DNA of 64,000 bases from Iphione sp. A-MEVVRFRX5 (taxonomy: Eukaryota). The notes below the pieces were generated by a model. The model did not search any database, was not told the DNA's origin, and saw nothing but the letters and a program-made list of their open reading frames with translations. This document shows, one piece after another, positions 10,287-48,573 of the stretch. Position numbers and translations under genes: made by a program. Location: positions 111,600,001 through 111,664,000 of the forward strand of contig OZ320315.1 of the NCBI GenBank assembly GCA_976226885.1. Direction: 5' to 3'. Each line of letters starts with the position of its first letter. Position 1 is the first letter of the stretch.

Positions 10287-12995
10287 TTAATCTAACATCA
10301 AGTGAGCATTCCACTGTAAGACACCACGGTAACGCAAGGATCTCTCAAAGAGCGCAGAATGTGGTCTGGGGAGAGCACCCCTCGGAAGTAAACCACATCT
10401 TGTCTTGGTTTTGGAAGCAAGTGGAATGTTACCAAGCTTGATCAGCTTACCAACACATGCCATGCCTTTTTGTGCCAGAAGCGTATCCACTCTGGGTACA
10501 CCATAGCGTTCATTTAGGATCCTAGGAAGAAGGAAATCCTTAGTTTGAAGACATACACGCGCACATTTGTTAACAAATATCTGAAATCGAACTCGCTGAG
10601 AAGCTGTCAAAGTAAACATGGCAGCAGCTTGGTAGTTTAGGTGTGATAAAACAAGAGCCGAGAAGAGTGTTTTCCGAGCCAGTACCGGCAGGTTATATTC
10701 AACTCTACCAATACCAAGGGAAGCTACCCACATTTTCCGTTTCAAATGACCTAAACCAGCATTGGGCTTCAGAGTTGAGTCAACAGTGTACCCTAGGATA
10801 TTGACAGTCGATTCCATCTTAAGTTTCTCACTGTCAAGCTGGAGGTCCAGGTCCGTCCCCCGTCCTTTGCCTACGGTGATGTATGAACATTTCTTTTTAT
10901 TCAAAAAGAATCCTGTGTTGCTACACCACTTAGAGACATTGTGTAGAACTGAAAGGGCTAACTCCCTGAGCTTTGCCAAGTTACGACTGTAGACTGCAAC
11001 CGTTAAGTCATCAGCATAAAGCACAGTGGTGCATGAGTCAGGGATCACATTAGTTATGTCATCAATGGCAACACAGAAAGCACTGGGTCCCATTACAGAA
11101 CCTTGTGGAACGCCATGTGTCAGAGGTAACACCCTTGATTTCCTACCACTACATGCCACTCATTGGAAGCGCTTACTTAAGTAACTAAGGACGAATTTCA
11201 AAGTGTCTTGACCAATACCTCTCTTAGCAAAATCATGCAGTAGCTTGGCATGACTCACCACATCAAAAGCACTTTTCAGATTAAATAACAAAATGCAGGT
11301 ATACATGTCATCATTACACTTATCGAAGACATCACACATGAGGGAGGAGAATGCCGTTTCTGTAGAGCGCCCCTTTCTGAACCCATGTTGTGAATTCGAA
11401 AAGTGACCTTCAGACTCCAACCATGTAACCAATTTCTTGTTAAACCAGGACTCAAAGATTTTTGCCTGCAAGGGAAGAATGGAGACCGGTCTGTAATTGT
11501 CTAGAAGCTCCGAATCCCCCTTCTTGTATACAGGGGTGACAGTGGCTGTCTTCCACGAGCTGGGAAATCGACATATGAGGATGGACTGAACAAAAATCCA
11601 AGTAAGCAGCTCATGGCAGCTGATAAGTACTGGCTTTAAGATACAGGTAGGAATACCTTCCACCCCTGAAGATTTGGACAATTTTTGCCGCATAATGATA
11701 GGGAGAATTTCAGGTGGGGTGGGTGGGGGAAGATCGTAGGTCACCGGTGGTGGAGCATAGGACGGGACAATTGGAGGGCCCCTGACACTGGTCAAGTCGT
11801 CAACCTTTCTTATAAAGTGCTCGTTAAACTGTGTAGCAAGGGTGGTGGATGCTGTACTAGATTCAGTCGGAAGTCTGGTTTTGGAGGACCTACGCCCCGT
11901 AATCTTGTTCAGAATGTCCCAAGTGGATTTGGAGTCACCCCTAACTTTTGCCAGAGTGTTAACCCAGTAGTCCCTTCGTTCCTGTTTGATGGCAGTCCTA
12001 ACCTTTTTATTAAGAAATTTGAAGATACGCCTACTGTCCTCATGCCCCTCCCTCTTCCATCGTCTGAAGAAATACCTTCTATCTGCGATTAGGTTTAATA
12101 AGCCTGGGCTAGGGGAGAATCCATCCTTTTCTTTTTTGACTACTCGCACTCTAGGGGGGAAAGCCTTATCCAGATAATCCGTTATTGAAGACTCCAGTCC
12201 CTCCCATTTCTCCTCAAAGTCACCTTCCAAGTCAAGATGACCTTCATTCTTCAACAAGTCAAGTAACTCCGTCAAGTCAGCACTGGACCAGTTTTGTACT
12301 TGTATAGTCTCCCGGACAAGTTTACCAACACCTTTCTTGATCACAACTAAAACTGGTAAATGGTCACTATAGAACTCAGGCAATGCAGTACCTGTCGAGT
12401 GTGAAGTAAAATCCAGCCATAAATTGTCAAGGCAGTTGGTGCTGTTTATCATAGTGGCCTCCTGCATAGCTTGATGGAAGCCCAGACCACTTAGATGGTT
12501 GATAAATAAGGATCCAACTCTTGACTGCCTAGGATAATCATAATTGAAGTTGCCCATAACAATACGATCCGACCCTCGAGTGGTAAAAAGTTCAGCACAT
12601 GCAGCAGAGAGAGCAGAAACCGAGTCATCAGGCTTATCCCCAGGCGGTCTGTAGACACCGAGAATCTCTAACAATTTCCTATCCCCAGCCTTCACTTGGA
12701 TGCCTAGAAACTCAGAGCTAGACACGTCATCAATATACTGTGTAACTCTCTTGACACAGAAGGCATCATTTATATACATCATTAAGCCACCTCATCTATT
12801 TTTGTGTGTACTAATCCTATCCGCTCTGACAAGGTCATATCCTGGTATTGACAATACTCCGCTATCAATGGTGTCATTAAGCCACGTTTCAAGACAAATA
12901 TCGATATTGTTATCAAGGAGAACCCTACGAACATCGTCAACCTTTTTTACAATACTCCTAACATTGTGGCACAGTACCTTCAGACCAGGTGACAT
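10287..12995 (-). pseudogene. LINE A ORF2 (APE endonuclease + reverse transcriptase), one frame with two TGA stops
   Basis: HNVRS, ETWL, YRPP, SDH, NYRPVS, GVPQGS and YADD motifs. The three ORF pieces share one frame, with stops at 12792-12794 and 11160-11162. Confidence 0.92.
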
Positions 12996-13237
12996 AATGG
13001 AGTGATTAATTGATTGAAGAGATACTAGATGTTATGCTCAAAACAAATTGAGGACTAATAAAGGTATGGATTAGGAGTTAAATGATAAAGGCTAGAGAGC
13101 ATAAATTATTAAATAGATGACTAATAATATAAAGGTAGGGAATAGAGTAGAAATACAAATATGGACAACTGAGCCCAGATCGCAATTATTAACACAGCTT
13201 ACACAAGGACAATAAGACAGACAGAAAAGCTGTGGCA

Positions 13238-13470
13238 GTGCTAACCGATCAACATACTTTGATGAATACTAAACTACACCGTAAGAGTTTGGTATGTACA
13301 CATGATTATCAACAGTCCATCAAATCCGATTACACAGTATCAGTCAGGATTAAGTGCTTACTGATCAATATGCTTGGATAAATCGATAAAGTATTTCACA
13401 GAAGAGGGTTAAGTAAGTACAAGAATATCAGCAGGCCCTCGAATCGGATTACACAATGCTAGTCAGATTG
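13238..13470. repeat. Diverged ~116-bp tandem duplication in the LINE A inter-ORF spacer
   Basis: GTGCT.AC.GATCAA.AT.CTT starts at 13238 and 13354; GATTACACA...AGTCAG ends both units. Confidence 0.6.
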
Positions 13471-13982
13471 TTACATGAATAAGATACAGTGTATACCCTA
13501 TGTTAACACAGAATATGTACATCAACGTTCCACACATATAATGTCATCAAGAATGCTACATGTGAAGTAACTTCAGAGAGAGTTAGAGAAATACAGACAC
13601 AAAATGAGATAACAGTAACAGCAAAGTAGCAATTACAGATCAGTATCAAGAATAATGTGGGGTCAAGTAATTGTAATTTTAAAAATAAGTCCACCTGAGA
13701 AAGAGCCCACTGAGAAGAAAGTTCAGAAAAGTTCAGAAAAGTTCACCTGGCTCTCCTGGTAAGCCGTCAGGTTGTGAGCTAGAAGGCAATATATGCTTGC
13801 CAGGACAGATATCAAAATTTCCTAAGTAGAGGTAGTGTTTAGTATAAAATAGTTGGTGATTAAGGCGTAACTTGTGCATCATAGAAAAGCATCGATCGCC
13901 AGTTCCTGGACATAATACAATCTAGAACAGAATAGATGTTACACATCTGATGCAGTCGTAAGGATATATCAGGCAGTACCAG

Positions 13983-14700
13983 TTAGAAATGCACATGCAT
14001 CAGCGGCCCATTATTAGATATGTGGTAGTATCCATACTGGGCAATGTACTCATGGAGAAACAACCTAATGGAGTAACTCCATTCCCCAATAGTAGCGGCT
14101 TTGGGTCTAAAACCATCCGAGCAGAGATGGCTAAAATTGTTGACTACCTCACCACCACTTGGATGAGAGACAGGCGTGGCGAGTGAACAGGGGAAAACAC
14201 CAATCATGGAAGATGAGGACTCACATCGCAGGTTGTGGATTGCTACAGCTGAGTCCACCTTGAACTGATCCAGTTCATCAATCGAGTCAGGATCCAGGCC
14301 TTGGATGTCAACACTTGCAGCTGTACAGAAAACCACGTGTGGGCCACCGTCAGGACCACTGCTGCAAAAATGATTGATTTTTCCTTGATAATAGTCAAGA
14401 CGTTCTGCATACTGGGCAGGCGAACCTGTGTGTACAGTCCATGTACCATCCACCTTGACAACCCAATCGTACATCCCGCAAGCTATGAGGACAAGATGAA
14501 ATCGCGACACATCAGATATATGTTAACCAACGTGCGATCATCCTATAGGAACCTCTCTTGAGGGTGATAAGATGGATCAAAGTTGGGGGCAGCAGATGCA
14601 GCACTGCTTCCAACTCTTTGAATGCGGGAGCCGACCTGGAGTCAGCCACCACAAGGATCTTCGTCCGATGACTAACTGTATCTTGGTCCGGGTGTCACAT
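13983..14700 (-). pseudogene. LINE A stand-alone SGNH/GDSL hydrolase ORF (early stop plus one frameshift)
   Basis: Block I ILVVADSRS at ~14660-14630 lies in a different frame from block III IACGMYD and block V DGFRP. ATG at 14700 is immediately followed by TGA. Confidence 0.7.
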
Positions 14701-14783
14701 GATCTTAGCTTAAATACAAAAGGAGCAGCATCTCAGTAACACAGAAATAAATATGTGCTTTAATGTTCAATGAACTACAGAAT

Positions 14784-15266
14784 TTAAGACGCAGTCGCAT
14801 ATTCTTTACGAAGATCCATTAGCACAACTCCGACCAGATTTTTCCCAGGCATGTTTACATCGGTTGACCCACTTACGGCCATTGCCAGGTGACCCCCAGT
14901 TCCAAGAATAACATCTCTATCGACAAAGTTCACAATACGCGATCCAGAACCAATCAGAGCATCCTTTGCAGCCAGATTTTTGGAGAAGTATTCCTTGTAC
15001 ATTTTCGTAAGGATTACCTTCAAATTCGAGTCCCATGATGCGCTTATTTTCGTCTTGGAGAATGCCCGTTTCGCCTCAGAATTCGTGCGACAATTATTCA
15101 ACGCATGACCTAATTTCAGATCACGTTCCAGTTCACTACAACGCGAGAACAGGGCGACTTCCGGCGAGTCATAATGTTTACCATCCAGGACGACTGGACC
15201 AATACATTCTGGCGAAAACAGTGAGTTATCTGCATCAAAATTGTATTCATTGTCCATAATGGCCAA
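14784..15266 (-). CDS. LINE A NADAR (YbiA-like) domain, in frame with ORF1
   Basis: VLDGKHYDSPE, SW...L..MYKEYF..N..AK.AL..SG, DRDVILGTG and PGKNLVGVVLMDLR match the NADAR pattern (G.y.s.E...W...KF.N.L.L.TG...D..WG.G...G.N.LG.LM.R). Confidence 0.8.
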   Translation of the reverse strand: MAIMDNEYNFDADNSLFSPECIGPVVLDGKHYDSPEVALFSRCSELERDLKLGHALNNCRTNSEAKRAFSKTKISASWDSNLKVILTKMYKEYFSKNLAAKDALIGSGSRIVNFVDRDVILGTGGHLAMAVSGSTDVNMPGKNLVGVVLMDLRKEYATAS

Positions 15267-15302
15267 GTGAAGGGAGTTGTCCTTTAGAAAATCTGGCAGA
15301 TA

Positions 15303-16442
15303 TTAGGTGTCAAGAGGTGAATACCTCTCACCGTCGATTAGAAGATCAATACCACGCGCGGACGCCATGTGTCCCAGCCCATGTGCTTTGGAGGCTAACC
15401 GCTGATTCCTTTTGTTTACATCCAGCGCAGAGACTGGCAGGTCCTCCTTGATGTAGATTCCCTTTACGCGGAACTTCATAAGCTTGTGCTTATTTCGTAG
15501 AATTATATTGCGCGATTCTATAGAATCCAACAGAACCCCGACTCTAAGGCTATGCGATGTTTCATTGTAGACAACACAGTCAACAAGTTCATTGGGTCGA
15601 ACCCCAGCTGTGAATCTCAATAAATCGGACAGGAACCATTTAAGATTCTGTCGGTTAGCTTTTGGAACTCCATCAATCAGCAGTCTCCTGTTCCGATCAT
15701 TGATTTCGAGACGTGTTAGGTCAGACCGCATCCCTTCATAATTAGCGGACAATGCCCTTAGCTTGTTTTCAATGTCTACTATTTTGCTGTCAAGTGCAGC
15801 ACATCGAAGATTCTCAGCCTTATTGAAAGTAGACTCATTCTTGTCAATTCTAGCCTTCAGCTTGCCCAAGTCCTCCTTAATACCTTCAATATCAGCACTG
15901 AATTTCTCTTCAATTACTTGTAGTCTGCTACTGATCTCTAGTGCAAACTCCATACTGACAACGGATGCACCATTACTATTGACAGGTGTAGATGTCAGCA
16001 AATGATCCAGGCTACTCGGACTACGAAAGGTAGCACTCATTGTACCAATACTATGATCAGGCTCCGTTTCACTTTGAACATGTGATGTACTTGAAGAACA
16101 GGCAACTGAATCAATACCCGATGTAGCAGATTTGGTAGTAAATGTGGTATTGTAGGTATTGTTTGACACTGGGTTCGAATCGGACATAGTACCGTCAGTG
16201 TTGTGACAGGTATTTGTGCTAGACTCGGATACGAATAGCGAACTTACTGTACCAGTATTGTTGCCAGTAACACTCTCGATCACCTTTTCTTTAGTTCCAC
16301 TCACAGTAGTAAAGGTAGAGTTGGCCAGTTCCGCAAGAGTTAGCCTAGTCAGCGCGACCGTTGGGTTCAAACTGACCCTCGTTCTGTCCATCGTGGCGGT
16401 TACCTTACCAGCACACACTTTAGATTGCGATTGTGGAGCCAA
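15303..16442 (-). CDS. LINE A ORF1 (S/T-rich N-terminus, coiled coil, L1-type RRM); first ATG at 16391
   Basis: Heptad region ISSRLQVIEEKF...LTRLEIND, then RNRRLLIDGVP...LRNKHKL...IYIKEDL, typical of LINE ORF1 RRM/CTD. The listed start is TTG. Confidence 0.85.
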   Translation of the reverse strand: MAPQSQSKVCAGKVTATMDRTRVSLNPTVALTRLTLAELANSTFTTVSGTKEKVIESVTGNNTGTVSSLFVSESSTNTCHNTDGTMSDSNPVSNNTYNTTFTTKSATSGIDSVACSSSTSHVQSETEPDHSIGTMSATFRSPSSLDHLLTSTPVNSNGASVVSMEFALEISSRLQVIEEKFSADIEGIKEDLGKLKARIDKNESTFNKAENLRCAALDSKIVDIENKLRALSANYEGMRSDLTRLEINDRNRRLLIDGVPKANRQNLKWFLSDLLRFTAGVRPNELVDCVVYNETSHSLRVGVLLDSIESRNIILRNKHKLMKFRVKGIYIKEDLPVSALDVNKRNQRLASKAHGLGHMASARGIDLLIDGERYSPLDT

Positions 16443-16576
16443 TTAGGGCTCAACATTGCTTTGACTCTTACTAGAGCATGTGCAAGGCATCCTAAGTTGT
16501 TGATACAATCCAAAATAAGGGGTCACGCATCTTGGAGCTATTTAGGATGGCTATTGCCTGGGAGAGCCAGGAACGA

Positions 16577-16600
16577 CACATCTACTCGTCCGCCATCTTG
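16577..16600 (-). promoter_or_regulatory. LINE A 5' internal promoter-like motif (YY1-like CAAGATGGCGG + DPE-like AGATGTG)
   Basis: Motifs lie at the 5' terminus of A; the arrangement is similar in B and C. Confidence 0.55.
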
Positions 16601-16697
16601 GTACCAAAAAAGACAATACATTATCCGTTGAACAGTTAAAATAAGGATAGTTGTAGTATTGTATAGGTAGTAGAGCCTGAACCAAAGACAACGACAT

Positions 16698-16989
16698 AGG
16701 ATTACATCCTTCCCGTCTCATGGTAATATCGATACTAACCTTACGACAATATACTAAAATAATGCGAATCAGGATTATATCCTTCCTTATCCACATAAAA
16801 ATTCTGTGTGTATTAAACTCTATTGATAATATTACTATCTAATAGTCCTTTATGAAGGATTACATCCTGCTTTATTCCGCTTTTCTACTTCTATACGTAC
16901 GTAACTGATTGTCTAGCATAAGGACTTATATTCTCATAGTATTATTTCTCTACTAATTCCAACAGTTCCAGCTACTAGGATTACATCCT
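16698..16989 (-). repeat. Four copies of a 13-nt mini-hairpin AGGAT-TAY-ATCCT in the LINE B 3'UTR
   Basis: Copies at 16698-16710, 16771-16783, 16856-16868 and 16977-16989. Confidence 0.8.
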
Positions 16990-16999
16990 TCCATGTCAT

Positions 17000-19782
17000 T
17001 CAAGGTACATAATAGTTCACAGTTCTCTTCCTACTAGTTCTTAGGCGCTTCCAGAGAGACTTCATTTTACTTTCATTATAATAACTCTCCTCCTTAGTCA
17101 AGTTTTGCCACATCTTCTGAAATCTATGCGTCACTGATCTACGAAATGACTCACTATTAGGATAATTTACCTTTATCTTTCTTTTCAAGCCTTGTCTAGT
17201 GTATCTTTGACATCCCATATTATCATTATCGCCCTTATTTAGTGCGTTATGATAGTATCCCAAACGCAGAACATTTGACTCCATTATACCCTCCATTTCT
17301 CTAAAAACATCATCTCTGCTTGGTTGTTGATTTAATCCCACACATACTCGATAGATTCTTCTTCTAAGAGTAATTAATTTTTCCATTGATCGCCCTGTCA
17401 CATTGATAAGTACAAAATTTGAAAAATCTATAATAGGAAATATCATAGACTTACTCAGGTATAAAGATCTGTTGACAGTTAGGTCTTGTCTTATTGATCG
17501 TAGATGAGCCAATTTACAATAACCTTTCCTTAATATCTCATTAATATATGCATCCCACTTCAGATTCTGATGTATCATAACTCCTAAGTATTTAAAGTTC
17601 TTTACCCATTCTATTATTTTACAGTCTAATTTTACTTCAAAATTATATGTTGTTTTACCAAAAGTAATTGTCATTAACTTGGTTTTCTCCACATTTACTA
17701 GGATTTTGTTTTGAATTGACCATCTGTAAAGTGCCATGATATTTTTCTCTGTGTGCCGCTGTAAATCATATACAGTTTTTCCTACTGAGACTATGGCTAC
17801 GTCATCAGCATACATAAAACATTTTGCATTATGTATTTCTTTGGGTAGGTCATCTATAAATATTAAAAACAATAGGGGTCCCTAATAGACCCTTGTGGGA
17901 CCCCACATGATAAGGACAGTCTATCCGATACTTTATCATTAATTCTTGTTTCCATCCATCTTTCACATAAGTAGACTTTTATTAATGGCACTAAAGACCC
18001 TAATCCTTTTTCCTTCAACTTCTGTAATATGATATTATGATTTACACTATCAAATGCTTTAGAGAAATCTATAAAGCATGTAGCCACTTTCAATTTACTA
18101 TTAAGTGATGTATTTACGTAATCAAGAAATGAATAAATGGCTGTATCCACCCCATGTCCTCGACGAAAACCATGTTGTGCTACATGTATCAAATTATTAT
18201 CTTCCAAGAATGTAATAATTCTACTACATATTATCTTCTCAAGTATCTTTACTGGATAAGGTAATTGGCTTATAGGCCTAAAATTATTAATATCGTACAC
18301 AGTACCAGCCTTATGTAGCAGAGTGACCAATGCTGTTACCCATTCGCACTGAAATTTATGTAATCGGATTATCTCGTTAAATAAGTGCAATAATTCAAAG
18401 TGTGTATTAGAAAAGATAATTTTCAATATCCACGTCGGTATATCATCAATAAGACTAGCCTTGTTCACTGTTACTCCCTTCATTGCCTTTAATAACTCAT
18501 TTGAGGATATTTCTTCCATTTCCATTTCACAAGTCGGTGACCGATTTGAATTATAATCACTGTCACCAATTTTAGCTGCCACTCTCGAGCCTATTGAACA
18601 AAAATATCGATTAAAACTTTGAGCCATTTCCTCATCAGATAATATCTCATTTCTGTCATTTTTTAACATTGGTTTCTTTCGTGCCTTGTTATAACCATAC
18701 GATCGTTTCAGTTTACCCCAAAATGCTAATGGATTATTACGTGATTTATCCAGTTCACTTTCAATTAATTCTCTCTTCAATTGACTAGCCATTGTCCTGA
18801 CTTGATATTTTAATATTCTTGACTCCAAAACTAGCATAGGGCTATTGTTAATTCTTACTTTTTTGATAGCTTGGTGTTTTCTCCTTACTAGATCTAGAAA
18901 TTCACCTGTTACCCACCTTGGGGTATTAGTTCGTCGTCTTACGCGTTTCTTATTAACAAGTCTATGTATTAGTGCCCTAATACGTTCCAGCATTATATTC
19001 CATTTTTCTTGTGTGTCAGTACTTCTATAATAATCTCCCCAACACAATTCATTTACCGACTTTACTAACCGCACTTGATCTAACTTGGAGTAGTTTATAA
19101 TTTCTTGGTTTTCATAACTATGGACCCTTTTGATTTTATTCATTAATATAATTTCTAACATATCATGGTCACTAATAGTTGATTCAATTACCTTTACAAA
19201 AATATCTTCGTTTAAATCACTGATACATAAATCAATGCATGTACGACTTGTCGCAGTAACCCTAGTCGCTTCCTTGACTAGCTGTTTCAGATTTTCCTCT
19301 AACAAAATACTGTTGAGCAATTTTTTATTAGTTGACGTTTCCAACCAATTGACAATCATGTCACCTACCATTAAAATATTGCTCACATTATTAATACTTT
19401 CAAATAAATCAGATACTATTTCAAGAAATCTTTTGAAATTTCCTTTTGGGGGTCTATAGCAACCAATTAGGGTAAACGGTTTTCCACCTTTCCAGTATAA
19501 AGTAAGTTTTATATACTCAATATCCTCTTCAAGTTGACTGACTACATTAGTTACTGCTTCAGCTAGTACATTTGTAATATAAATTAGTATTCCACCTCCA
19601 TGTCTGTTGCGATCACATCTAAACAACTGATAATTATCTATATGTACTACAGCATCCGGGATATCACTACTTAACCAAGATTCTGTTAAAACAAATATAT
19701 CCGGCCTAGTACTTGAAAACAAGAGATGAAATTCATTCAACTTACCGACGACACTGCGTATATTAAGATGATATATTGTCAT
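17000..19782 (-). pseudogene. LINE B ORF2 (APE + RT) with a single frameshift at ~17870
   Basis: HLNIRS, TESWL, YRPP, SDH, NFRPIS, DFSKAFD, GVPQGS then frameshift to FLIFIDDLP...YADD. Confidence 0.92.
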
Positions 19783-20495
19783 ACCTCGTCAGAGCTTATC
19801 CATTATCCAAATCATACATAATGCAGGGGCAGTTCACATCACCTGTTAAATATAGTACTTGAACACATTCATTAATTTTCAATTCAAATGACATTTCTGG
19901 GACTAACATCTTCAACAAAGAAATCATATAAGTACAAAGTATTTTTATATTTAGTAAATTAAATAAAGTAAAGTTGGCTAGCATTTGCCCGCTGCTCCCA
20001 ATCCACATCATTACCTCTTATTCTAGTCCATCTGTTACTGTCAATTCAATATAATTTTTCAACTAATACATATTACTTTAGTGGACGGTGCACAGGAACA
20101 AGTAACTCATATGACATAAAGTCTGAGTTAGTTTATTTCAACAATGTGACATTAGTTATCCCTCATAATAACATAAACAAACTCTTTAACCATAGCGTCC
20201 CAGATATACCAACAAATACGATCGAACACAATTGATTTAGTTACAATCAATAATATCCTGTACGTTATTGTCAATAATCTTAAGCTAGTTTCTTATGAGC
20301 AAATATCATATTAACATAAATACATTTATAATCAAGTATAAAGACCACGCCGCGCACTTGTATTACATACTAGGTACGCGGCTAGTCATTCAACTCAATA
20401 TATATATATTCTAAAACAATAATATTGTGTTCAACATGCCAGTATTACATACCTAGCATGTCATTCTGTCCTAGGTCACAATAATTCAAACAAAT

Positions 20496-21182
20496 CTAGC
20501 GTGAATAGCCATAGATAAGCCGCTCGAGAGCATTTATAATCCTGTGAACCAACCTGTGCTTCCATACTGTCCTCAAGTGACACCCATCATAGTATCTACC
20601 TAACCTATGATGCCATCCACCTTGATTTCTAGTGTGGACAACCATACTTGTCCAAGGAGTTGGTATCCCAAAATAACGATTCATTAACATAATCCTTTGG
20701 TTCAAAGTGATCACAGAAGTCAGTAACATAGACTGAATCATGTGTGACTGTACATCATCGAGCATGTGTCCATTCAACCAACAGTTATATCTGATGTAAT
20801 CCACACAGAAAATAGTGCAAAACATCACTGCTGAGTAGGGGAAACACCATTGAATGGCTTTTCTTGTCATCCAATATACGTATTCCACCTCAGATACTGC
20901 AGTCTCACTATCTCCAAATCGTGGCACCACATACTTGGTCGTCTCGTCTCCCTCACCAGTACGGACACGTATAAGCTTCATCAAATTGTTCCCACCACCA
21001 AGCACTACTATCGTATATGGGTACGGATACCATTCTCCTTGAATTATTGTCTGACATAAATCCTCCAACCTTGCTCCGGGGTAATAATGTACAGTAATAT
21101 ACCACCCCCACATGTCAAACAACTCCTGTAGCCCTCTCCCATGGCTACTAGTAAAAAGGTGTACATGACGGGCATACTCCAT
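20496..21182 (-). CDS. LINE B stand-alone SGNH/GDSL hydrolase (esterase-like), ~228 aa, intact
   Basis: Block I FTSSHGR, block II YPGA, block III VLGGGNN, block V YDGCHL. First ATG at 21182 (the track start at 21200 is TTG). Confidence 0.8.
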   Translation of the reverse strand: MEYARHVHLFTSSHGRGLQELFDMWGWYITVHYYPGARLEDLCQTIIQGEWYPYPYTIVVLGGGNNLMKLIRVRTGEGDETTKYVVPRFGDSETAVSEVEYVYWMTRKAIQWCFPYSAVMFCTIFCVDYIRYNCWLNGHMLDDVQSHMIQSMLLTSVITLNQRIMLMNRYFGIPTPWTSMVVHTRNQGGWHHRLGRYYDGCHLRTVWKHRLVHRIINALERLIYGYSR

Positions 21183-21274
21183 TATATCTGTTGTAAACAA
21201 GCACAGTATTCAGTTCGCAGGAACAAAACGGTCTGAGCCGTCCCCATGCCAATCCAGCTAATTACAGTCACGAC

Positions 21275-22786
21275 TCATTTACCCCCTCCCCTCTTGTAGT
21301 TCACTGTAACACGTTGTAAAATTAGCCCCAACTTATTCTGGCCACGAAAACGACCTGTCTTTAGCTCCTTGGACTTCTTAGTCGCACCTGCCCCCCAAAA
21401 TTGATTTGAAGTTGCTTCAATCAACGATACGTCACCTGTTTTGACCAGATCATCACCAAGTTTTTTGTTACTCAAGAACTTCTGTCTAACAATACCCTCC
21501 ATTATTTTCAGCTTCTGACTCTCCCAGTCGGGTATATTAGGTAGATCTCTTCGGATTATTTTTAGTGCTTGGGGGTCACTTGTGTGCAAACTCAGGGAAT
21601 TTTTTGCTGATACTTTTGCTGCATTACATTTCGCATAAGTGTATGCTTGTTCTGAACTGGAAAATTTTAAACCAGCCCAGGGTACCTCGCAAGGATACAG
21701 GTTTGATAGGAAGGAGCTTCCCCCTGCAAACAACATAAACCCTGAGGCAGAACTCGATATATTTTCACTATTTCTCCCTTCTTGTGAGTCACCTTTCTTC
21801 GAATCAGCTACCTCAAATTCAGCACCCTCCAGGTATTCATTTGTATACCATTGCCCCTCTATCTGTATCTTATCCCCTCGGATAAAAACTTGACTAGTTG
21901 GATTCAGAGTTTTAACCTCTTTTGCAATAGCCCTTAGAGATGATTGTACACGTCGTTGTTCCGGCGTGAGATCTGGATTGATCCAGATATTTCTTCCCTT
22001 CAATCTAGTCTTAGCTCGTAAGACCTGGTCTTTAGTCATTCCTCTCACAAATCGAACAAATATGGAGGGAACCTTAGATTTATCCTTTTTCGGCAATAAG
22101 AACATTTCATCAATATCACCCTCTCCAATCACAACACGTATCGACGAGAAGAGCCTCAGCACATTGTCAAGTAGGGTACCATTAGCATCCAATACAAGCC
22201 CATCTATGTATAGACTATTTTTTCTTGACCTTTTGTCGAGTTCGTCATAGCCCTGTATCGAGGATATTTTACTTTGTTTGTCCTTCATCAAGTTCAATTC
22301 TGCCCTTAATTTAGTATTTTCACTCTTCAAGCTAGTTACAGAGGCTTCCAACTCAGATATCTTTGAAGTATTTTCCCCAATTTTGGTAGTAGCTTGAGTG
22401 ATTTCAGTCCGAAGTGCCGCAATATCAGATGATAATTTATTCAACTCTGACACTGATATTTCTTGATTTTTCAATATTTCAGCCATTTGATTTTGAAATA
22501 ATTCATGAATCTTATCTGGCTCTTCACTCATGCTCATCTCAGTTAATGGACTATTATCCTTTTTACGTTTATTTCGAGCTATATTTGAGTCACCTGCAGG
22601 TGTCGATTGGACACGTGAGAAGAAATTCCATAAACTCTGTTGTTTTGAAGTAGAGGTACTAGAAATTGTTACATTATCAGATAAATCTCCTGTCTTCTGT
22701 GTTTCATTGATTATTTCATTATCAGAAGTAATATCAGAGATATTACCCTCCCCACACTGAACAGAGGTCGATGCAACTGAGGCCAT
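21275..22786 (-). CDS. LINE B ORF1p-NADAR fusion, 503 aa, intact
   Basis: Coiled coil; RRM (RKNSLYIDGL...VRFV...IWINPDLT); C-terminal ~150 aa FLSNLYPC...FSSSEQAY..AK...W...KF..N..L...L.KTG...LIEA...FWGAG...GQNKLGLIL. Confidence 0.9.
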   Translation of the reverse strand: MASVASTSVQCGEGNISDITSDNEIINETQKTGDLSDNVTISSTSTSKQQSLWNFFSRVQSTPAGDSNIARNKRKKDNSPLTEMSMSEEPDKIHELFQNQMAEILKNQEISVSELNKLSSDIAALRTEITQATTKIGENTSKISELEASVTSLKSENTKLRAELNLMKDKQSKISSIQGYDELDKRSRKNSLYIDGLVLDANGTLLDNVLRLFSSIRVVIGEGDIDEMFLLPKKDKSKVPSIFVRFVRGMTKDQVLRAKTRLKGRNIWINPDLTPEQRRVQSSLRAIAKEVKTLNPTSQVFIRGDKIQIEGQWYTNEYLEGAEFEVADSKKGDSQEGRNSENISSSASGFMLFAGGSSFLSNLYPCEVPWAGLKFSSSEQAYTYAKCNAAKVSAKNSLSLHTSDPQALKIIRRDLPNIPDWESQKLKIMEGIVRQKFLSNKKLGDDLVKTGDVSLIEATSNQFWGAGATKKSKELKTGRFRGQNKLGLILQRVTVNYKRGGGK

Positions 22787-23026
22787 TCTAAAAATAGTTA
22801 CCAGTACAAATACACGTGCTATATGTGCAGGTTACGTTGCACGAACCTCCTATTGTCGCTCAAACTTCTTTAAATAGCCGTACAATTAATGTTTCTATTA
22901 TTCTTGCATTATTTTCTACTTTCTTTCAATGCACAATCAATGTATCTTCCCATATAAACTCTCAATAATGCCTAAATGTTCCTGTGCACCTACCTTTTTT
23001 ACAAAAATTGGGAGCGGCAAGCACAC

Positions 23027-23052
23027 CACGTCTACCCCATGCTAGCCATGCA
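23027..23052 (-). promoter_or_regulatory. LINE B 5' promoter-like motif (TGCATGGCT ... AGACGTG)
   Basis: Same motif order and similar spacing as in A and C, ~250 nt upstream of the ORF1 ATG. Confidence 0.45.
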
Positions 23053-37937: not shown

Positions 37938-40770
37938 ATGACTGACTCAATAGGCAACTTAAAGGGTTTTAAGATATGTCAACTAAATATTCGATCTTTT
38001 TTCAACAAGGCTCCATTACTCAATGTATTGCTAACGAGTAACAACATAGACATTATGTGCCTCCAGGAGACATGGCTGACACCACAAATTGCTACGTCTA
38101 TGATCTCCTTCCATGGATATAATCTGGCCAGATTAGACAGAAATCATTACGATAACCCCACCAAGAGGGGTGGAGGGCTAATCCTATACAGTAAACATGC
38201 AATCAACCAGGACATATATAGTCAACTGAACATCAGTAGTGGCGATATAGAGGTCCAATGCCTACTGTTAACACCAGTGCATCAGAAAAAAACGATTGTT
38301 ATTAACTGCTACCGGCCACCATCTGGCTCAATACCAACATTTACTGCTGCAATCAGAAAAATTCTGGGATCAATTGATTATAGGAGAGAAATTATATTTA
38401 CAGGCGATATAAACCTTCTTGACAAAAACAGCAAGCCAGTGATTGAACTCCAACAGTTAATGTCCTCACATGGCCTTCTACCCCATATTACTGAACCGAC
38501 CAGACAAGGAAAAATGAATGGCACACTCATTGATGTAATATTCACTAATGTCAAACATATCAGCAAAGCGGGTATACTAACAGCTCACCTATCTGATCAT
38601 TATGCAACATACATTATCAAGAAAAAACAAAGAGGTGCCAGAGTGCCCTAACAATACAATCACTACTATACCAGAGTAGTCAATAATGACTATGATAGTA
38701 CTGAAATCAAGGAATATTTGGATAGTTTAAATTGGTACAACCTTTACAACGATGATAATGTTGATGAAGCCTGGGGATCTTACTACTGCAACTTGCTGGC
38801 AGCTGCAGACAGATTCTTCCCCGAGAAGAAGAGATGCAGACGCACTGACTACAACCCATGGATGACCAAACAACTACTGGGTCAAATTAGGCTAAAGAAC
38901 TACTACTTACGTAAGGCCAAACAGAGAAAGGATCCCGACACTACTAACATAGCAAGAAAGTTAAGAAATGATCTGATCAAAAATGTGAAATTACATAAGG
39001 AATTCTGTTAGATCAAGGATAGAGATGGATAAAAAATGTCCTGCTAAAATGTGGCAAAGCATCAAGGCTCTACTTGGTGATGAGAAAACAAAGACAACGC
39101 ATATCAACCTGACTGAAGCCCAAGACGATACATCCAAAGTGCCTAACATCTTCAATGAACACTTCATTAACTGTGGATATCAAATTATGAACAATGTTCC
39201 GGGTCCTAAAAAAACTGATGATCAAAACATACATACCTCCTCAGAAGAAGAGTTTGTACTGCAACAATTCACCATTGGTGAAATAACATCAGTTCTGAGG
39301 AATCTGAAAACCTCCAAGTCCTCGAATGTACCTAAAATCAATGCAAGAATTCTAAAAATACTACTAGGACTAACTCTTAATCAACTGACTCACCTGCTTA
39401 ATCTGTCAATTGAGACTCTGAGTCTACCAAGAGATTGGAAAATAGCAACAGTCATCCCTTTACATAAATCAGGCTCTCAACTTGATCCTAGTAATTTCAG
39501 GCCCATCTCTCAATTATCAATATTTGCCAAAATCATTGAAAAACTGGTCTACAACCAGCTATACAGATACTTGGAGCGCAATTCACTGTTAGCTAACTCT
39601 CAGTTCGGCTTTCAACAGGCGAGAAGTTCTCACTCTGCAATCCTGAAGCTACTGAATGAGCAATACATGTCATTGAATAATAACACGATCTCCAGTCTCC
39701 TATTCATAGACCTCAAGAAAGCATTTGACACAGTTAACCATGACCTGCTAATCCACAAACTTAAAGATGAGTTCAACTTCACAGATCAATCACTGACATG
39801 GTTTAGGAACTACTTAAGTAATAGACCACAACGAGTCAAGTGCAATGGTAAACTATCTGATGAACTTATTGTCAAATGTGGTGTCCCACAGGGTTCCACA
39901 CTTGGACCCTTGCTCTTCTCTCTTTGTATAAACAGTCTAATTAGGTTCATTAGTGAACCAGTTATCCTTTTCGCGGATGATACAGTGATCTACACTGAAT
40001 CAAAAAATGAAGAAGATCTATATCACAAACTTGTAATTACATGCAATGAATTAGAAACATGGTGCAATATTAACAGACTTTCTATAAATGCCAGTAAATC
40101 CAAAATTATGATTATTGGCAAACGGAAATCATCAAATGGTCAACCAGTAGTCAAGCTATATGATAAAATACTTGAAGTGGTGGATTCTTACCGATATCTT
40201 GGTATCAACATTGATGACAAATTATCCTTTCATATTGAAGCTGAGAAACTATGTAAAAATCTTGCGACGAAAATATACCAACTTAACAAAATCAAGGGGA
40301 ACTTATCTCCAAATATAGCCCTAATGCTGTATAAGACTACCATCCAACCAATAATTGACTATAGCACCATGTATCTAACCCCATGCACCAATAAAACACT
40401 CACTAGGATCCAAGCTTTGCAAAACAGATCACTCAGAATTATTTACAATATGAAGCACAAAAAGAAAAAGCTCAAGGCCTATGAAATACATAACAAGGAC
40501 CTACATCTAACTCTGGGTGTACAAAGCACATATGTCAGAAGAACTCACATAACTATCAAATCAATGTTCAGGGCAATCAACATTGGAATTCTTCCTATGA
40601 AACCACCATCAATCACCAGAGATGCTGATGGACCTCTTCTTAAACAGATATACACTGGAGCTCAACTATGGAACAAACTTGATCCAATCCTAAGAAACAT
40701 GTTAGATCCAAAAGAATTTTCTATAAACTCAGGACTAGCTTGCTACAAACTGGCTAACAAATTATATTAG
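37938..40770 (+). pseudogene. LINE C ORF2 (APE + RT); stop at 38649 and stop/frameshift at ~39010-39025
   Basis: QLNIRS, QETWL, YRPP, SDH, NFRPIS, DLKKAFD, GVPQGSTLGPLLF and FADD motifs. Confidence 0.92.
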
Positions 40771-46900: not shown

Positions 46901-48573
46901 GGTCTCTCAACCCTCGAACGAAGAGCATCAATGTCAAGGTCGGGCAGTTCTTTGAAGTGCAGTCCCAAGGTCAAGGTCTCTCAGCCCTTGAATGAGGAGC
47001 ATCAATGTCAAGGCAGCTGCCCTGGCCTCCAAAGAGTCTGGGAGTCACGACCAACAGTCCAGGGACTGGGGTTATCAGGTCACCGCCCAAGCCAGGCCGG
47101 GGCGCCCCCAATATACGACCAAATAGTATTGATAATCTAACATGTCTCTATCTCCTCCCTGAGATTTTCTTTGAACATGGACCAGGAGGTGTCCAGGCCC
47201 ACGTTGTCATTAGAGAGATTATCTACCGATTCTGAAATGGATTCTAGCATTTGTTTCTATCATCGTTTGACTAAGCACATTTCTCGCACCAAATCTTTGC
47301 TTTCTTTTCCCTGTTTTTTTTTGTGTAGAACAAAAGTAGGGTAATGATCACTTATCAGGCAACCTATAGTCCCTGCAGATGAGACATATGTCAAATTAGT
47401 ATAGATATGATCAAGGCATGATGAGATCGACTGGTGAATAAATGTTTCTTAGATAATGTATTCCTTTAGGTTATATGAGGTCATCAGATTTCTAAGGTGG
47501 ATCTTAATTGGTCTCTCATGTAGCCAGTCTACGTTAAAATCTCCACCCAGTATTATGTCTCTGAATTCAGATTTAAGCAAGTGAGAGCATCCTTCAAGTA
47601 TGAGGCTGCTATCCGAAGTTGGCACTCGGTTGTCAGTAAAGCAAGCCTATGTGCAGCAATTGCCTATGCTTTTGTTCGATTGTCACCCACAATCCCTTGA
47701 TGGCTTTGTTACAGAAGGTATATTCTGAAACTGTGACAAAGTTAAAACCTTTTTTTACATATAGCAACAGCCCCCATCCTCTATTCTTTTCTTCTGATTT
47801 CATATCAACCCTCACAAAATCATAGCCATCAATAGTCAGATAATGACCCAGCATAGAGGCGGTTAACCAGGGTTCAGATATGCCCAGAACCTCTGGGCTC
47901 TCATCATTTAGCAGTGAATGCAGATCCTCAAGTTTGTTGAAGACAGTATGAACATTCAGAAAAATAAACTCTCCCTTTTATAATAAAGAAAGAGATAAGT
48001 GAACAAACATGTGAAATAAAGTAACATCCAGCAAGATTCCTGATTATATTTTACCATGTTCCTGCCATTTTCCCAGGGCCAAAAAATCTATTGGCCCTGT
48101 TTATATCCATAATTTTAGAGTCCACAAACCATACAATCTGGTTCAATACATCTTTGGCATCAGTGTTATAAGACTCTATGGAGTACACTCTCCAATTAAT
48201 TCCTATTATTGAGTAGAACACAATATCTAAACCATTTTTTCAATTAAATGTTGTCAATACTTATCAATTAATCCTTGTACTGTGTCTTGCAGTAAGCGAG
48301 ATGCTTGTAGCGCAGATGAATAGAGCCTTTATAGTGTTCTGTGATATCGCAAAAGCTAGCTTGAAAAATGATTAATGAATGATTATGAAAATCATCACCA
48401 ACCAGATGCTCCAGGAAGGTGTCATACTGTAGCCCAGGTGTCATGCTTGTGTGTACAACTATAGCATCATCATGATGCCTCTCCAGCATCTGGGCCATGT
48501 CCTGTCTCCTTGAGTCGGCAATATACAGGACACGCTTAGCAGCGCATAGTTGATGGGTCATGTTGAACATCAT
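43948..48573 (-). mobile_element. LINE D: degraded, 5'-truncated CR1-group element (SGNH remnant, APE, RT) split by a solo LTR
   Basis: SGNH at 48573-48050 (VLYIADSR, QASFCDIT, VFYSIIGIN); APE at ~47975-47300 (FLNVHT, SEPWL); RT at 45411-44490 (NYRPI, GVQLGS); C-terminus at ~43948. Confidence 0.8.
45638..47142 (-). mobile_element. ~1.5-kb GC-rich solo-LTR-like insertion, possibly itself nested
   Basis: TGT...ACA termini; TSD TGTT/TGTC; removing it restores LINE D ORF2 as EEIET-QCPRRRVK; CCAAT, TATA and AATAAA in order on the minus strand; internal ~75-bp repeats. Confidence 0.7.

What the first reader, a model, noticed from the sequence alone, without database searches (positions are those of the whole stretch)
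13983..22786. LINEs with an ORF1p-NADAR fusion plus a separate SGNH hydrolase ORF: a candidate undescribed retrotransposon module set
Seen: two divergent LINE families (A and B) share the order coiled coil-RRM-NADAR, then SGNH ORF, a 0.7-1 kb spacer and APE-RT. Established: SGNH esterases occur in some CR1/L2 ORF1 proteins (e.g. ZfL2-1). NADAR/YbiA proteins hydrolyse N-glycosidic bonds, and in DarT1-NADAR toxin-antitoxin systems they remove ADP-ribose from guanine in DNA. Guanine ADP-ribosyltransferases exist in animals (pierisins, clam CARP-1). Inference: these LINEs carry their own de-ADP-ribosylase in the RNP as counter-defence, analogous to viral macrodomains, plus a lipid-binding or esterase accessory. 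I do not recall NADAR being listed among LINE ORF1 types, but cannot verify that.
Basis: partly seen in the sequence, partly recalled or inferred. Interest (0 to 1): 0.93.

Follow-up and report, generated by a model that had tools for sequence, protein, structure and literature searches.

The report
Three-gene LINEs with NADAR and esterase
Two neighbouring jumping genes (LINEs) each encode three proteins: an L1-like RNA-binding protein ending in a NADAR domain (an enzyme type that strips ADP-ribose from DNA/RNA bases), a separate small SGNH esterase, and the usual endonuclease/reverse transcriptase. The design is real, old and widespread in invertebrate assemblies, its NADAR part has been mentioned once in print, and its function is untested.

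Summary

**Element B** (window 23049-16611, minus strand) has four parts in order:
- ORF1: coiled coil, RRM, CTD, then NADAR (Pfam E 3e-21; fold matches YbiA, 8BAU and the human L1 ORF1p trimer).
- A free-standing SGNH-fold ORF (Z 17 to GDSL hydrolases; the Ser/Gly/Asn/His blocks are kept).
- A 716-bp AT-rich spacer.
- APE-RT, broken by one frameshift.

**Element A** (about 16600-10305) belongs to a very different family. Its ORF1 is homologous over its whole length (hhalign 95%). Its NADAR has lost the catalytic Glu and a Trp. Its middle ORF is a pseudo-SGNH (His to Arg). Even so, A-type copies are 98.7% identical to each other and under purifying selection.

All 20 sampled genomic relatives of B keep the same gene order. 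dN/dS is about 0.12 for NADAR and 0.06 for the esterase.

In public data, 414 clusters match the ORF1-NADAR profile. One foreign assembly has the same three-ORF layout. Another has ORF1-NADAR plus APE-RT with no esterase.

A 2025 paper (PMC12477816) already noted NADAR in oyster Tx1 LINE ORF1s. This scan has also reported the fusion many times on other DNA of this genome.

The counter-defence reading is plausible for B-type elements but untested. Family A, which is active with both modules catalytically dead, weakens it.

Verdict: a new variant of a known kind.

The parts
16611..23049 (-). Element B, full length (6439 bp). It is a tricistronic non-LTR retrotransposon. This copy is inactivated by one frameshift in the RT.
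   Evidence: The 5' end is where homology with L011-L013 starts (ATGGCTAGCATGGGGTAGACG). The 3' end is where it stops (...AATGTATTGTCT, no poly(A)).
21275..22786 (-). B ORF1 (503 aa): disordered N-terminus, coiled coil, RRM, CTD, linker and NADAR
22271..22519 (-). B ORF1 coiled coil (aa 90-172)
   Evidence: A single long helix with pLDDT above 90. It aligns to the stalk of the L1 ORF1p trimer.
21830..22219 (-). B ORF1 RRM plus CTD-like part (aa 190-319)
   Evidence: Secondary structure. Foldseek hits to 2yko, 2ldy, 2w7a and generic RRMs.
21293..21739 (-). B ORF1 NADAR domain (aa 350-498), YbiA type, with the catalytic set retained
   Evidence: Pfam E 3.2e-21. PDB 8bau E 1.8e-7. Fold TM 0.75 and 0.68. 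Residue mapping. dN/dS about 0.12.
20496..21182 (-). B middle ORF (ORFe, 228 aa from its ATG): a free-standing SGNH/GDSL-fold esterase
   Evidence: S10, G33, N62, D196 and H199 are conserved. dN/dS about 0.06. It has its own ATG 92 nt after the ORF1 stop, and its frame relative to ORF1 varies between copies.
19783..20495 (-). B spacer between ORFe and ORF2: non-coding, AT-rich (GC 0.32), with 29 ATGs
17000..19782 (-). B ORF2 (APE endonuclease plus reverse transcriptase). The reading frame breaks at about 17863-17885, inside the RT.
   Evidence: Pfam Exo_endo_phos_2 and RVT_1. Relatives have one ORF of about 935 aa across this point.
16611..16999 (-). B 3' UTR with four copies of the palindromic motif GGAT(G/A)TAATCC (16978-16988, 16857-16867, 16772-16782, 16699-16709)
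10305..16600 (-). Element A, from a different and much more divergent family with the same gene order. This copy is broken. Its 3' end was not determined.
   Evidence: Homology with L032 (98.7% nt) ends at 16600. ORF2 homology reaches 10305.
15303..16442 (-). A ORF1, coiled-coil/RRM/CTD part, cut off from its NADAR by an in-frame TAA at 15300-15302
   Evidence: Intact relatives have a 585-aa single frame. hhalign to B ORF1 gives 95% probability over 360 columns.
14784..15266 (-). A NADAR-like domain, degenerate: the equivalent of 8BAU E125 is Phe/Tyr and that of W133 is Leu
   Evidence: Pfam 28-32 bits, below the 35.1 cut-off. Residue table, sequences. dN/dS 0.13-0.30.
13983..14510 (-). A middle ORF remnant (175 of 238 aa): a pseudo-SGNH with DGFR in place of DxxH and no Asn block
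   Evidence: Linked to the B esterase only through the L047/L048 middle ORFs. Atlas feature hits are all GDSL.
10305..12986 (-). A ORF2 (APE-RT), interrupted by a stop. About 24% identical to B-type ORF2.

Best explanation
**What it is**
Both elements are autonomous-type non-LTR retrotransposons with a three-cistron design.
- ORF1p is an L1-type (coiled-coil, RRM, CTD) RNA-binding protein. A disordered linker ties a YbiA-type NADAR domain to its C-terminus.
- A second, independently initiated ORF encodes a small SGNH-fold protein.
- After a long AT-rich spacer, ORF2 encodes APE endonuclease plus reverse transcriptase.

**What is shown**
- The domains and folds are as stated.
- The gene order is conserved in dozens of lineages.
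- Every module is under purifying selection.
- The same design occurs in other organisms' assemblies.
- The catalytic residues are retained in B-type elements and in most public NADARs.

**What is inferred**
- ORF1p coats the LINE RNA. That places many NADAR domains on the RNP and at the integration site.
- In catalytically intact lineages, such as B, NADAR would hydrolyse N-glycosidic ADP-ribose adducts on guanine or cytosine. The substrates would be the element's RNA, its cDNA, or the exposed target single strand. This would remove a block to reverse transcription, whether a host enzyme or a microbial toxin put the mark there.
- The SGNH protein would do what the esterase domain of CR1/L2-type ORF1 proteins is thought to do: bind or process membrane lipids during RNP assembly or transport.
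- In family A both modules persist as non-catalytic binding or scaffold domains.

**How likely**
I put the architecture at about 0.95. The de-ADP-ribosylation mechanism is much less certain.
For: **Architecture**
-.

**Selection**
- dN/dS is 0.05-0.12 for NADAR and ORFe among B lineages.
- dN/dS is 0.13-0.30 for the A-type NADAR-like part.

**Catalytic set**
- The HMMER alignment to 8BAU was read against the residue roles given in PMC11543638.
- That gives E43=E379, K50=K386, E125=E457 and W133=W464, invariant or nearly so in 16 B lineages.
- The same residues dominate in about 170 public ORF1-NADAR domains: E 156, K 116 plus R 31, E 155, W 152.

**Known activity of the enzyme family**
- YbiA-type and eukaryotic NADARs remove ADP-ribose from G and C in DNA and RNA in vitro (PMC11543638, PMC12945103).

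**Esterase role**
- The ZfL2-1 ORF1p esterase is active and binds acidic phospholipids (PMC3905857).
- A weak sequence link to that structure exists (4c1b, E 0.046).

**Spread**
- 414 clusters match at E<=1e-30.
- The three-ORF layout appears in loci L047 and L048 of a foreign assembly.
Against: - Family A has lost the catalytic Glu and a Trp of NADAR, and the His and Asn of the SGNH motif set.
- Yet family A copies are 98.7% identical, have intact ORFs elsewhere in the genome, and are under purifying selection. So neither activity is needed for transposition in that lineage.
- No ADP-ribosyltransferase was found in or beside the elements.
- PF01375 and PF03496 found nothing in the genome, but the controls were silent, so this is inconclusive.
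- Bicistronic relatives (L043, L049) lack the esterase, so the two modules are separable.
- There are no expression data: no sequencing run was listed.
- No enzymatic test exists for any LINE NADAR.
Confidence: 0.42

Rival explanations
1. **Non-catalytic module.** The NADAR domain, and likewise the SGNH protein, serves mainly as a binding or scaffold part of the RNP. It could act as a reader of ADP-ribose or NAD-derived ligands, a nucleic-acid or lipid binder, or a docking surface. On this view the conserved 'catalytic' residues in B-type elements are kept for ligand binding rather than turnover.
For: - Family A keeps both folds under purifying selection (dN/dS 0.13-0.30; the middle ORF is 71-76% identical between sublineages).
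- It does so after losing the equivalent of E125 (now Phe/Tyr), of W133 (now Leu), the SGNH His (now Arg) and the Asn block.
- Family A is also the most recently active family sampled (98.7% nt identity between copies).
- Non-catalytic SGNH proteins are known; Oskar is cited as one in PMC3905857.
Against: - About 90% of public LINE NADARs and all 16 B lineages keep the full E/K/E/W set. This is what one expects of an enzyme.
- All SGNH blocks are invariant in B lineages.
- PMC3905857 reports that transposon esterases keep their active sites and are active.
Confidence: 0.3
2. **RNA-processing or metabolite-repair enzyme, not counter-defence.** NADAR acts as an N-glycosidase on some other substrate tied to the element's RNA. 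Candidates are NAD-derived RNA ends or caps, ADP-ribose-containing splicing or repair intermediates, or damaged nucleotides. This follows the suggestion in PMC12477816 that the domain processes the RNA intermediate of transposition.
For: - YbiA enzymes were first known as N-glycosidases acting on riboflavin-pathway intermediates. The NADAR family was also predicted to act in NAD/ADP-ribose and RNA pathways, as summarised in PMC11543638.
- PMC12477816 proposes RNA processing.
- The domain is fused to the RNA-binding protein, not to ORF2.
Against: - No specific substrate can be named from the sequence.
- The residues that bind the ADP-ribose pyrophosphate and adenine in 8BAU (K50, K75, W89, R93 as Lys, W133) are conserved in B-type domains. 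That points to an ADP-ribose-containing substrate.
Confidence: 0.18
3. **Artefact or host-gene adjacency.** On this view the NADAR and SGNH ORFs are host genes or unrelated fragments that merely lie next to LINE ORF2s.
For: None beyond the absence of a Pfam hit for the middle ORF.
Against: - NADAR sits in the same open frame as the CC-RRM in hundreds of copies.
- The gene order is identical in 20 of 20 loci and in foreign assemblies.
- The copies share their 5' and 3' termini.
Confidence: 0.02

Closest known systems
Tx1-group LINEs of Crassostrea gigas in Repbase, whose ORF1 proteins carry YbiA-family NADAR domains (noted in PMC12477816, 2025)
   Same: - A YbiA-type NADAR domain sits at the end of a LINE ORF1 protein in a marine invertebrate.
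- The foreign relatives L043 and L047 have ORF2s that match human L1 ORF2p (E 1.7e-14 and 5.5e-23). That fits an L1/Tx1-like group.
- Family B is sister to them in an RT tree (SH 0.935).
   Different: - The paper gives one sentence and a supplementary alignment. It does not mention a separate esterase ORF, catalytic-residue status, selection or distribution.
- A profile of family B ORF2 does not detect L1 ORF2p at all.
- Family A is far outside this group.
- I could not compare directly with the Repbase sequences.
Human/mammalian LINE-1 ORF1p (Type II ORF1p: coiled coil, RRM, CTD; PDB 2yko)
   Same: The N-terminal two thirds of B ORF1 match the ORF1p trimer structure (Foldseek E 6e-6). The domain order is the same.
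   Different: - There is no Pfam Transposase_22 hit.
- The protein has an extra C-terminal enzyme domain.
- It has a PIP-box-like motif in the N-terminal tail.
- The element has three ORFs and no poly(A) tail.
Type IV esterase ORF1p of CR1/L2/RTEX/Penelope-like elements (ZfL2-1 ORF1p, PDB 4c1b; PMC3905857)
   Same: It is an SGNH-fold esterase encoded by a non-LTR retrotransposon, with the active-site blocks conserved in B lineages. There is a weak direct sequence link (E 0.046).
   Different: - Here the esterase is a free-standing ORF of about 228 aa with no coiled coil.
- It coexists with an RRM-type ORF1p. The described esterase ORF1ps replace the RNA-binding ORF1p and lack RNA-binding domains.
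- Family A carries a catalytically dead version.
NADAR antitoxins and YbiA enzymes (DarT1-NADAR, E. coli YbiA, P. nicotianae NADAR 8BAU)
   Same: The fold is the same (TM 0.68-0.75). The Glu/Lys/Glu/Trp active-site set, including the Glu that marks the YbiA subfamily, is present in family B.
   Different: - There is no partner ADP-ribosyltransferase.
- The domain is fused to an RNA chaperone of a eukaryotic retrotransposon.
- The equivalent of D130 is Asn in B lineages, as in 42 of about 170 public domains.
- Activity is untested.
Viral macrodomains (analogy only)
   Same: The concept is the same: a mobile genetic parasite carries its own ADP-ribose-removing domain.
   Different: The fold, the chemistry (N-glycosidic base adducts rather than protein or phosphate-linked ADP-ribose) and the carrier all differ. 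No homology is claimed.

Membership tests
NADAR (Pfam PF08719) | Profile match above the curated cut-off (35.1 bits) | tested here: met
   B ORF1 scores 76.7 bits, E 3.2e-21. Element A and its intact relatives score only 23.5-31.9 bits and so do NOT meet the cut-off. A is tied to NADAR through hhalign with B ORF1 (95% probability).
NADAR (Pfam PF08719) | NADAR fold | tested here: met
   The B model matches 2b3w (TM 0.75, rmsd 2.4) and 8bau (TM 0.68).
YbiA subfamily of NADAR, catalytically competent | Glu at the E125 position of 8BAU, plus the equivalents of E43 and K50 | tested here: met
   B has E379, K386 and E457, invariant or nearly invariant in 16 lineages. In family A the E125 equivalent is Phe/Tyr and the W133 equivalent is Leu, so the feature is not met for A.
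SGNH/GDSL hydrolase | SGNH fold | tested here: met
   The B ORFe model gives Z 17.0, rmsd 2.5 A over 167 aligned residues to 4rw0, and PAF-AH gives Z 15.7. Foldseek E is about 1e-6. No Pfam match was found.
SGNH/GDSL hydrolase | Four catalytic blocks (Ser, Gly, Asn, Asp-x-x-His) | tested here: met
   B lineages have SSHG, PGA, GGNN and DGCH, with S10, G33, N62 and D196 invariant and H199 in 14 of 15. Family A has DGFR and no Asn block, with Ser changed to Thr in some copies, so the feature is not met for A.
Type IV esterase ORF1p (CR1/L2 type) | Esterase fused behind a coiled coil within ORF1, with no RNA-binding domain | tested here: not met
   The esterase is a separate ORF with its own ATG. 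Its frame relative to ORF1 varies and it has no coiled coil. ORF1 has an RRM.
L1-type (Type II) ORF1p | Coiled coil, then RRM, then CTD | tested here: met
   AF2 secondary structure. Foldseek matches 2yko, 2ykp and 2ldy at E 6e-6 to 2e-4. Pfam Transposase_22 gave no hit.
APE-type non-LTR retrotransposon (LINE) | ORF2 with APE endonuclease and RT, multiple dispersed copies, shared termini | tested here: met
   Pfam Exo_endo_phos_2 and RVT_1. Thousands of candidates. Shared 5' and 3' ends. No target-site duplication was identified for B.
Tx1/L1 clade | RT groups with named Tx1/L1 references in a phylogeny | not testable with these tools
   - No named reference RTs were available.
- As a proxy, L047 and L043 match human L1 ORF2p.
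- The family B profile does not match it, but B is sister to L043/L047/L048 in a FastTree (SH 0.935).
- Family A is unplaced.
DarT-NADAR type toxin-antitoxin pair | An adjacent ADP-ribosyltransferase partner | tested here: not met
   The elements hold no ORF other than ORF1, ORFe and ORF2. PF01375 and PF03496 gave no match in the genome, but the controls were silent.

The most novel reading that the evidence does not exclude
Nucleic-acid base ADP-ribosylation, by host or symbiont enzymes, is a real restriction on retrotransposons in marine invertebrates. On this reading a large, ancient assemblage of LINEs answers it with an RNP-borne NADAR eraser, and in some lineages a dedicated esterase works in the same pathway. 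Many 'metazoan NADAR homologues' would then be LINE genes. Lineages such as family A would have escaped the restriction another way and kept both proteins as scaffolds.
Probability: 0.15. Interest if true: 0.85.

Novelty: new variant of a known kind. Interest (0 to 1): 0.6.

Why it matters
NADAR enzymes were shown only in 2023-2026 to erase ADP-ribose from guanine and cytosine in DNA and RNA. Their role in eukaryotes is still open.

This work finds the domain hard-wired to the RNA-coating protein of hundreds of LINE lineages, under purifying selection and usually with its active site intact. That gives a concrete, testable setting for nucleic-acid ADP-ribosylation in animals. It also warns that 'animal NADAR genes' may be transposon genes.

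The three-ORF layout, an RRM-type ORF1p plus a free-standing esterase, widens the catalogue of LINE architectures. It offers a natural experiment: family B has both active sites intact, and family A has both dead. It also raises the question of how ORF2 is translated behind a spacer of 0.5-1.3 kb that holds 16-34 AUGs.

Tried and rejected
- **Word-indexed protein search, ORF1.** The search with ORF1 found nothing, both with the whole protein and with residues 190-503. The index is too insensitive for this query, so this is not evidence of absence. The exhaustive profile search found 29,365 hits.
- **Direct comparison of the two middle ORFs.** hhalign of the B esterase against the A middle ORF failed (probability 0.2%). 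Homology rests on the intermediates L047 and L048 and on Atlas feature hits.
- **Esterase fused elsewhere.** Esterase profiles found no fused esterase in 150 public ORF1-NADAR proteins or in 120 ORF2 homologues.
- **Sequencing runs.** None was listed, so expression and the organism could not be checked and read laying was not used.
- **Further loci.** The 3' end and intact ORF2 of family A were therefore not examined.
- **Cluster names.** The listing of cluster members gave no names or taxa. The only taxon hint is 'Annelida' from Atlas clusters.
- **Early CR1 idea.** My early idea that family B is CR1-like came from a bird protein topping. I dropped it after the tree: the bird and frog sequences sit elsewhere.
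- **Host ART search.** PF01375 and PF03496 were uninformative.
- **Coupled loss of the two active sites.** This was considered but not established. Only two independent lineages were compared, and L023 has the esterase His changed to Asn while its NADAR is intact.

Full report
**What is in the window.**
On the minus strand two LINEs lie head to tail, 10 bp apart.

Element B runs from 23049 to 16611. Its 5' end is where homology with three related copies (L011-L013) begins, at ATGGCTAGCATGGGGTAGACG. Its 3' end is where that homology stops, at ...AATGTATTGTCT, with no poly(A) or microsatellite tail.

Element B has, in order:
- a 5' UTR of 263 bp;
- ORF1 (22786-21275, 503 aa);
- a 92-nt gap;
- a middle ORF (ATG at 21182, stop at 20496);
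- a 716-bp spacer with GC 0.32;
- ORF2 (19782-17000);
- a 389-bp 3' UTR.

ORF2 is split into 639-aa and 290-aa frames by a frameshift inside the RT, at about 17863-17885. Relatives have a single ORF of about 935 aa across this point.

Element A starts at 16600, where 98.7% identity with L032 ends. It runs at least to 10305.

**ORF1 of element B.**
- Pfam finds NADAR (PF08719) at aa 358-493, E 3.2e-21, 76.7 bits against a cut-off of 35.1.
- An AlphaFold2 model built on 16 natural relatives shows a disordered N-terminus and one long helix (90-172).
- It then shows an RRM-like beta-alpha-beta-beta-alpha-beta unit with a small CTD (190-319), a disordered linker (320-348) and a compact domain (350-498) with pLDDT above 90.
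- Foldseek ranks E. coli YbiA first (2b3w, TM 0.75), then Phytophthora NADAR with ADP-ribose (8bau, TM 0.68), then the human LINE-1 ORF1p trimer (2yko, E 6e-6).
- ORF1p is therefore an L1-type coiled-coil/RRM/CTD protein with NADAR added at its C-terminus.

**Is the NADAR likely to be active?**
The HMMER alignment to 8BAU was read against the residue roles in PMC11543638. It gives these equivalences:

| 8BAU residue | Element B residue | Note |
|---|---|---|
| E43 | E379 | |
| K50 | K386 | |
| K75 | K409 | |
| W89 | W421 | |
| R93 | K425 | |
| E125 | E457 | the Glu that marks the YbiA subfamily |
| W133 | W464 | |
| D130 | N461 | |

- All except the last are invariant or nearly invariant in 16 B-type lineages.
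In 8BAU that Asp is only a water-mediated phosphate ligand.
- Asn occurs at that position in 42 of about 170 public LINE NADAR domains.
- In the same public set, E, K (or R), E and W are present in about 90% of domains.
- The B-type domain therefore looks catalytically competent. This is inference from sequence, not a test.

**The middle ORF.**
- It has no Pfam hit.
- Its AF2 model (pLDDT 83, pTM 0.83) is an SGNH hydrolase fold. Foldseek finds GDSL lipases and acylhydrolases at about 1e-6.
- VIA gives Z 17.0, rmsd 2.5 A over 167 residues to 4rw0, and Z 15.7 to PAF acetylhydrolase.
- The four SGNH blocks are conserved: SSHG (S10), PGA (G33), GGNN (N62) and DGCH (D196, H199).
- A profile search of PDB sequences gives a weak hit to the ZfL2-1 ORF1p esterase (4c1b, E 0.046).
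- The ORF has its own ATG 41-190 nt after the ORF1 stop, overlapping it in two copies. Its frame relative to ORF1 differs between copies. It is therefore a separate cistron and not a frameshift or read-through extension.

**Conservation and selection.**
- ORF1 of B has at least 4178 first-look candidates in the 1.18-Gb genome. 88 were scored, at 38-81% identity, and most have open frames.
- I fetched 20 loci. All 20 have ORF1-NADAR, then the esterase ORF, then a spacer of 0.5-1.3 kb, then APE-RT. Seven have all three ORFs intact.
- Among the closest pairs, dN/dS is 0.12 for NADAR, 0.06 for the esterase and 0.10 for ORF2. Synonymous sites are near saturation.
- The sampled copies therefore represent old, separately maintained lineages, and every module is under purifying selection.

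**Element A.**
- Its ORF2 is only about 24% identical to B-type ORF2. Its ORF1 is barely detectable by BLAST.
- A profile-profile comparison of eight A-type ORF1s with the B-type alignment gives 95% probability (E 3.9e-8) over 360 columns, from the coiled coil to the end of NADAR.
- In the window copy, an in-frame TAA separates the NADAR part and the middle ORF is truncated. Relatives 94-98% identical have a single 585-aa ORF1 and a 238-aa middle ORF.
- A-type NADAR scores below Pfam's cut-off (23.5-31.9 bits). It has Phe/Tyr at the E125 position and Leu at the W133 position.
- The A-type middle ORF shows no direct profile similarity to the B esterase.
- However, the middle ORFs of two foreign elements (L047, L048) match both profiles (1e-11 and 6e-8).
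- The ESM-Atlas feature search also returns only GDSL clusters for the A protein.
- Aligned, the A-type middle ORF has DGFR where the others have DGxH. It lacks the Asn block, and Ser is Thr in some sublineages. It is a pseudo-esterase.
- Both degenerate modules are nevertheless conserved: NADAR-like dN/dS is 0.13-0.30, and the middle ORF is 71-76% identical between sublineages.
- The family is young. The window copy is 98.7% and 98.2% identical in DNA to two other copies.

**Outside this genome.**
- An exhaustive profile search of 1.84 billion representatives found 414 clusters at E<=1e-30. Typically one match spans coiled coil to NADAR in proteins of 400-680 aa.
- No names or taxa were attached to these. 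Atlas clusters point to Eukaryota, with Annelida the commonest phylum among three members with a known phylum.
- In assembly ERZ25767047, two elements have ORF1-NADAR, then a GDSL-like ORF of 209 or 219 aa, then a spacer, then APE-RT.
- In ERZ26222911, two elements have ORF1-NADAR followed directly by APE-RT, with no room for an esterase.
- So the esterase is an optional module within a larger NADAR-ORF1 assemblage.

**RT clade.**
- The ORF2 of L047 matches human L1 ORF2p over APE plus RT (E 5.5e-23). That of L043 matches at 1.7e-14. This fits the 'Tx1' label used for the oyster elements.
- A nine-sequence profile of family B ORF2 does not detect L1 ORF2p at E<=1. R2 proteins are its best matches.
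- In a FastTree of RT domains, family B is monophyletic and sister to the clade holding L043, L047 and L048 (SH-like support 0.935). L049 and family A fall elsewhere, and A has no support.
- Without named references, the clade names remain open.

**What is already known.**
- PMC12477816 (Genome Biology 2025) reports NADAR in an Ectocarpus Gypsy lineage. [quoted passage not shown]
- No other paper in the searched library links NADAR or DUF1768 to transposons.
- Esterases in LINEs are known only as ORF1p domains behind a coiled coil, in proteins that lack RNA-binding domains. They occur in CR1, L2, RTEX and Penelope-like elements (PMC3905857, PMC4120745).
- An RRM-type ORF1p together with a free-standing esterase ORF was not found in those sources.
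- This scan's own notes record the same fusion many times on other DNA of this genome. I re-derived the points I use here.

**How it most likely works, and how sure I am.**
- *Shown:* the architecture, the folds, the selection, the residue states and the distribution.
- *Inferred:* ORF1p trimers coat the RNA, so NADAR is concentrated on the RNP. In intact lineages it removes base-linked ADP-ribose from the RNA template, the cDNA or the nicked target. The esterase mediates lipid or membrane steps, as proposed for ZfL2-1.
- *The main counter-argument is family A.* It is active with both sites dead. This shows the chemistry is dispensable in at least one lineage and supports a scaffold or binding role as a serious rival.
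- No ART partner was found, but that search was inconclusive.

**Limits.**
- There are no expression data.
- The organism is not identified.
- The A-type proteins were not folded.
- Full-length A-type loci could not be fetched.
Broken frames were read in pieces, or with X at the break for the tree only.

Noticed in passing
window 22619-22642 (minus), aa 49-56 of B ORF1; the same position in L012-L030 ORF1s: A PIP-box-like motif occurs in all 16 B-type ORF1 N-terminal tails: QQSLWNFF here, and Q-x-x-[IL]-x-x-[FY]-[FL] in general. It is followed by a conserved KRKK..NSPLTE stretch. It is absent from family A. In 131 public ORF1-NADAR proteins it is no more frequent than in shuffled sequences (5 hits against 6). 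It may be a PCNA-binding motif on ORF1p rather than on ORF2p.
   Followed up: partly
window 16978-16988, 16857-16867, 16772-16782, 16699-16709 (minus); 3' UTRs of L011-L030: The 3' UTR holds 2-7 spaced copies of the 11-nt palindrome GGATGTAATCC in 14 of 20 loci. These include lineages only about 40% identical in protein. The motif is absent from the foreign loci L043 and L047-L049. It may be a repeated stem-loop recognised by the RT or ORF1p. The elements end in ...AATGTATTGTCT with no poly(A).
   Followed up: partly
window 19783-20495 (minus) and the equivalent spacers in L012-L024: The spacer between ORFe and ORF2 is 523-1308 bp long, has GC about 0.31 and holds 16-34 ATGs. It is unalignable between lineages except for a TATGTAATA motif. 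That motif is present twice near hairpin-forming flanks in the window copy, L012, L013 and L015. Scanning or reinitiation to reach ORF2 looks unlikely. An internal entry site or a separate transcript is possible.
   Followed up: partly
window 16600-16611: The 3' end of element B lies 10 bp from the 5' end of the unrelated element A, head to tail. Both 5' ends begin with a similar string, ATGG...GTAGA(C/T)GTG. No target-site duplication was seen for B.
   Followed up: no
window about 37974-40440 (+) and about 44706-47959 (-): Two further LINE ORF2 remnants, 25-31% identical to the B or A ORF2. BLAST found no NADAR or esterase match beside them.
   Followed up: no
public proteins P0142, P0155, P0164, P0193 (C-terminal extension of about 290 aa) and P0135, P0153, P0170, P0185 (N-terminal extension of about 260 aa): Some ORF1-NADAR homologues carry large extra regions with no Pfam hit and no match to either esterase profile. 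These may be further accessory modules in this LINE assemblage.
   Followed up: partly
literature: PMC12945103: The 2026 paper interprets NADAR homologues in sponges, corals and sea cucumbers as host protection against symbiont genotoxins. ORF1-NADAR LINEs are very abundant, so some of those homologues may be transposon genes. This was not checked.
   Followed up: no
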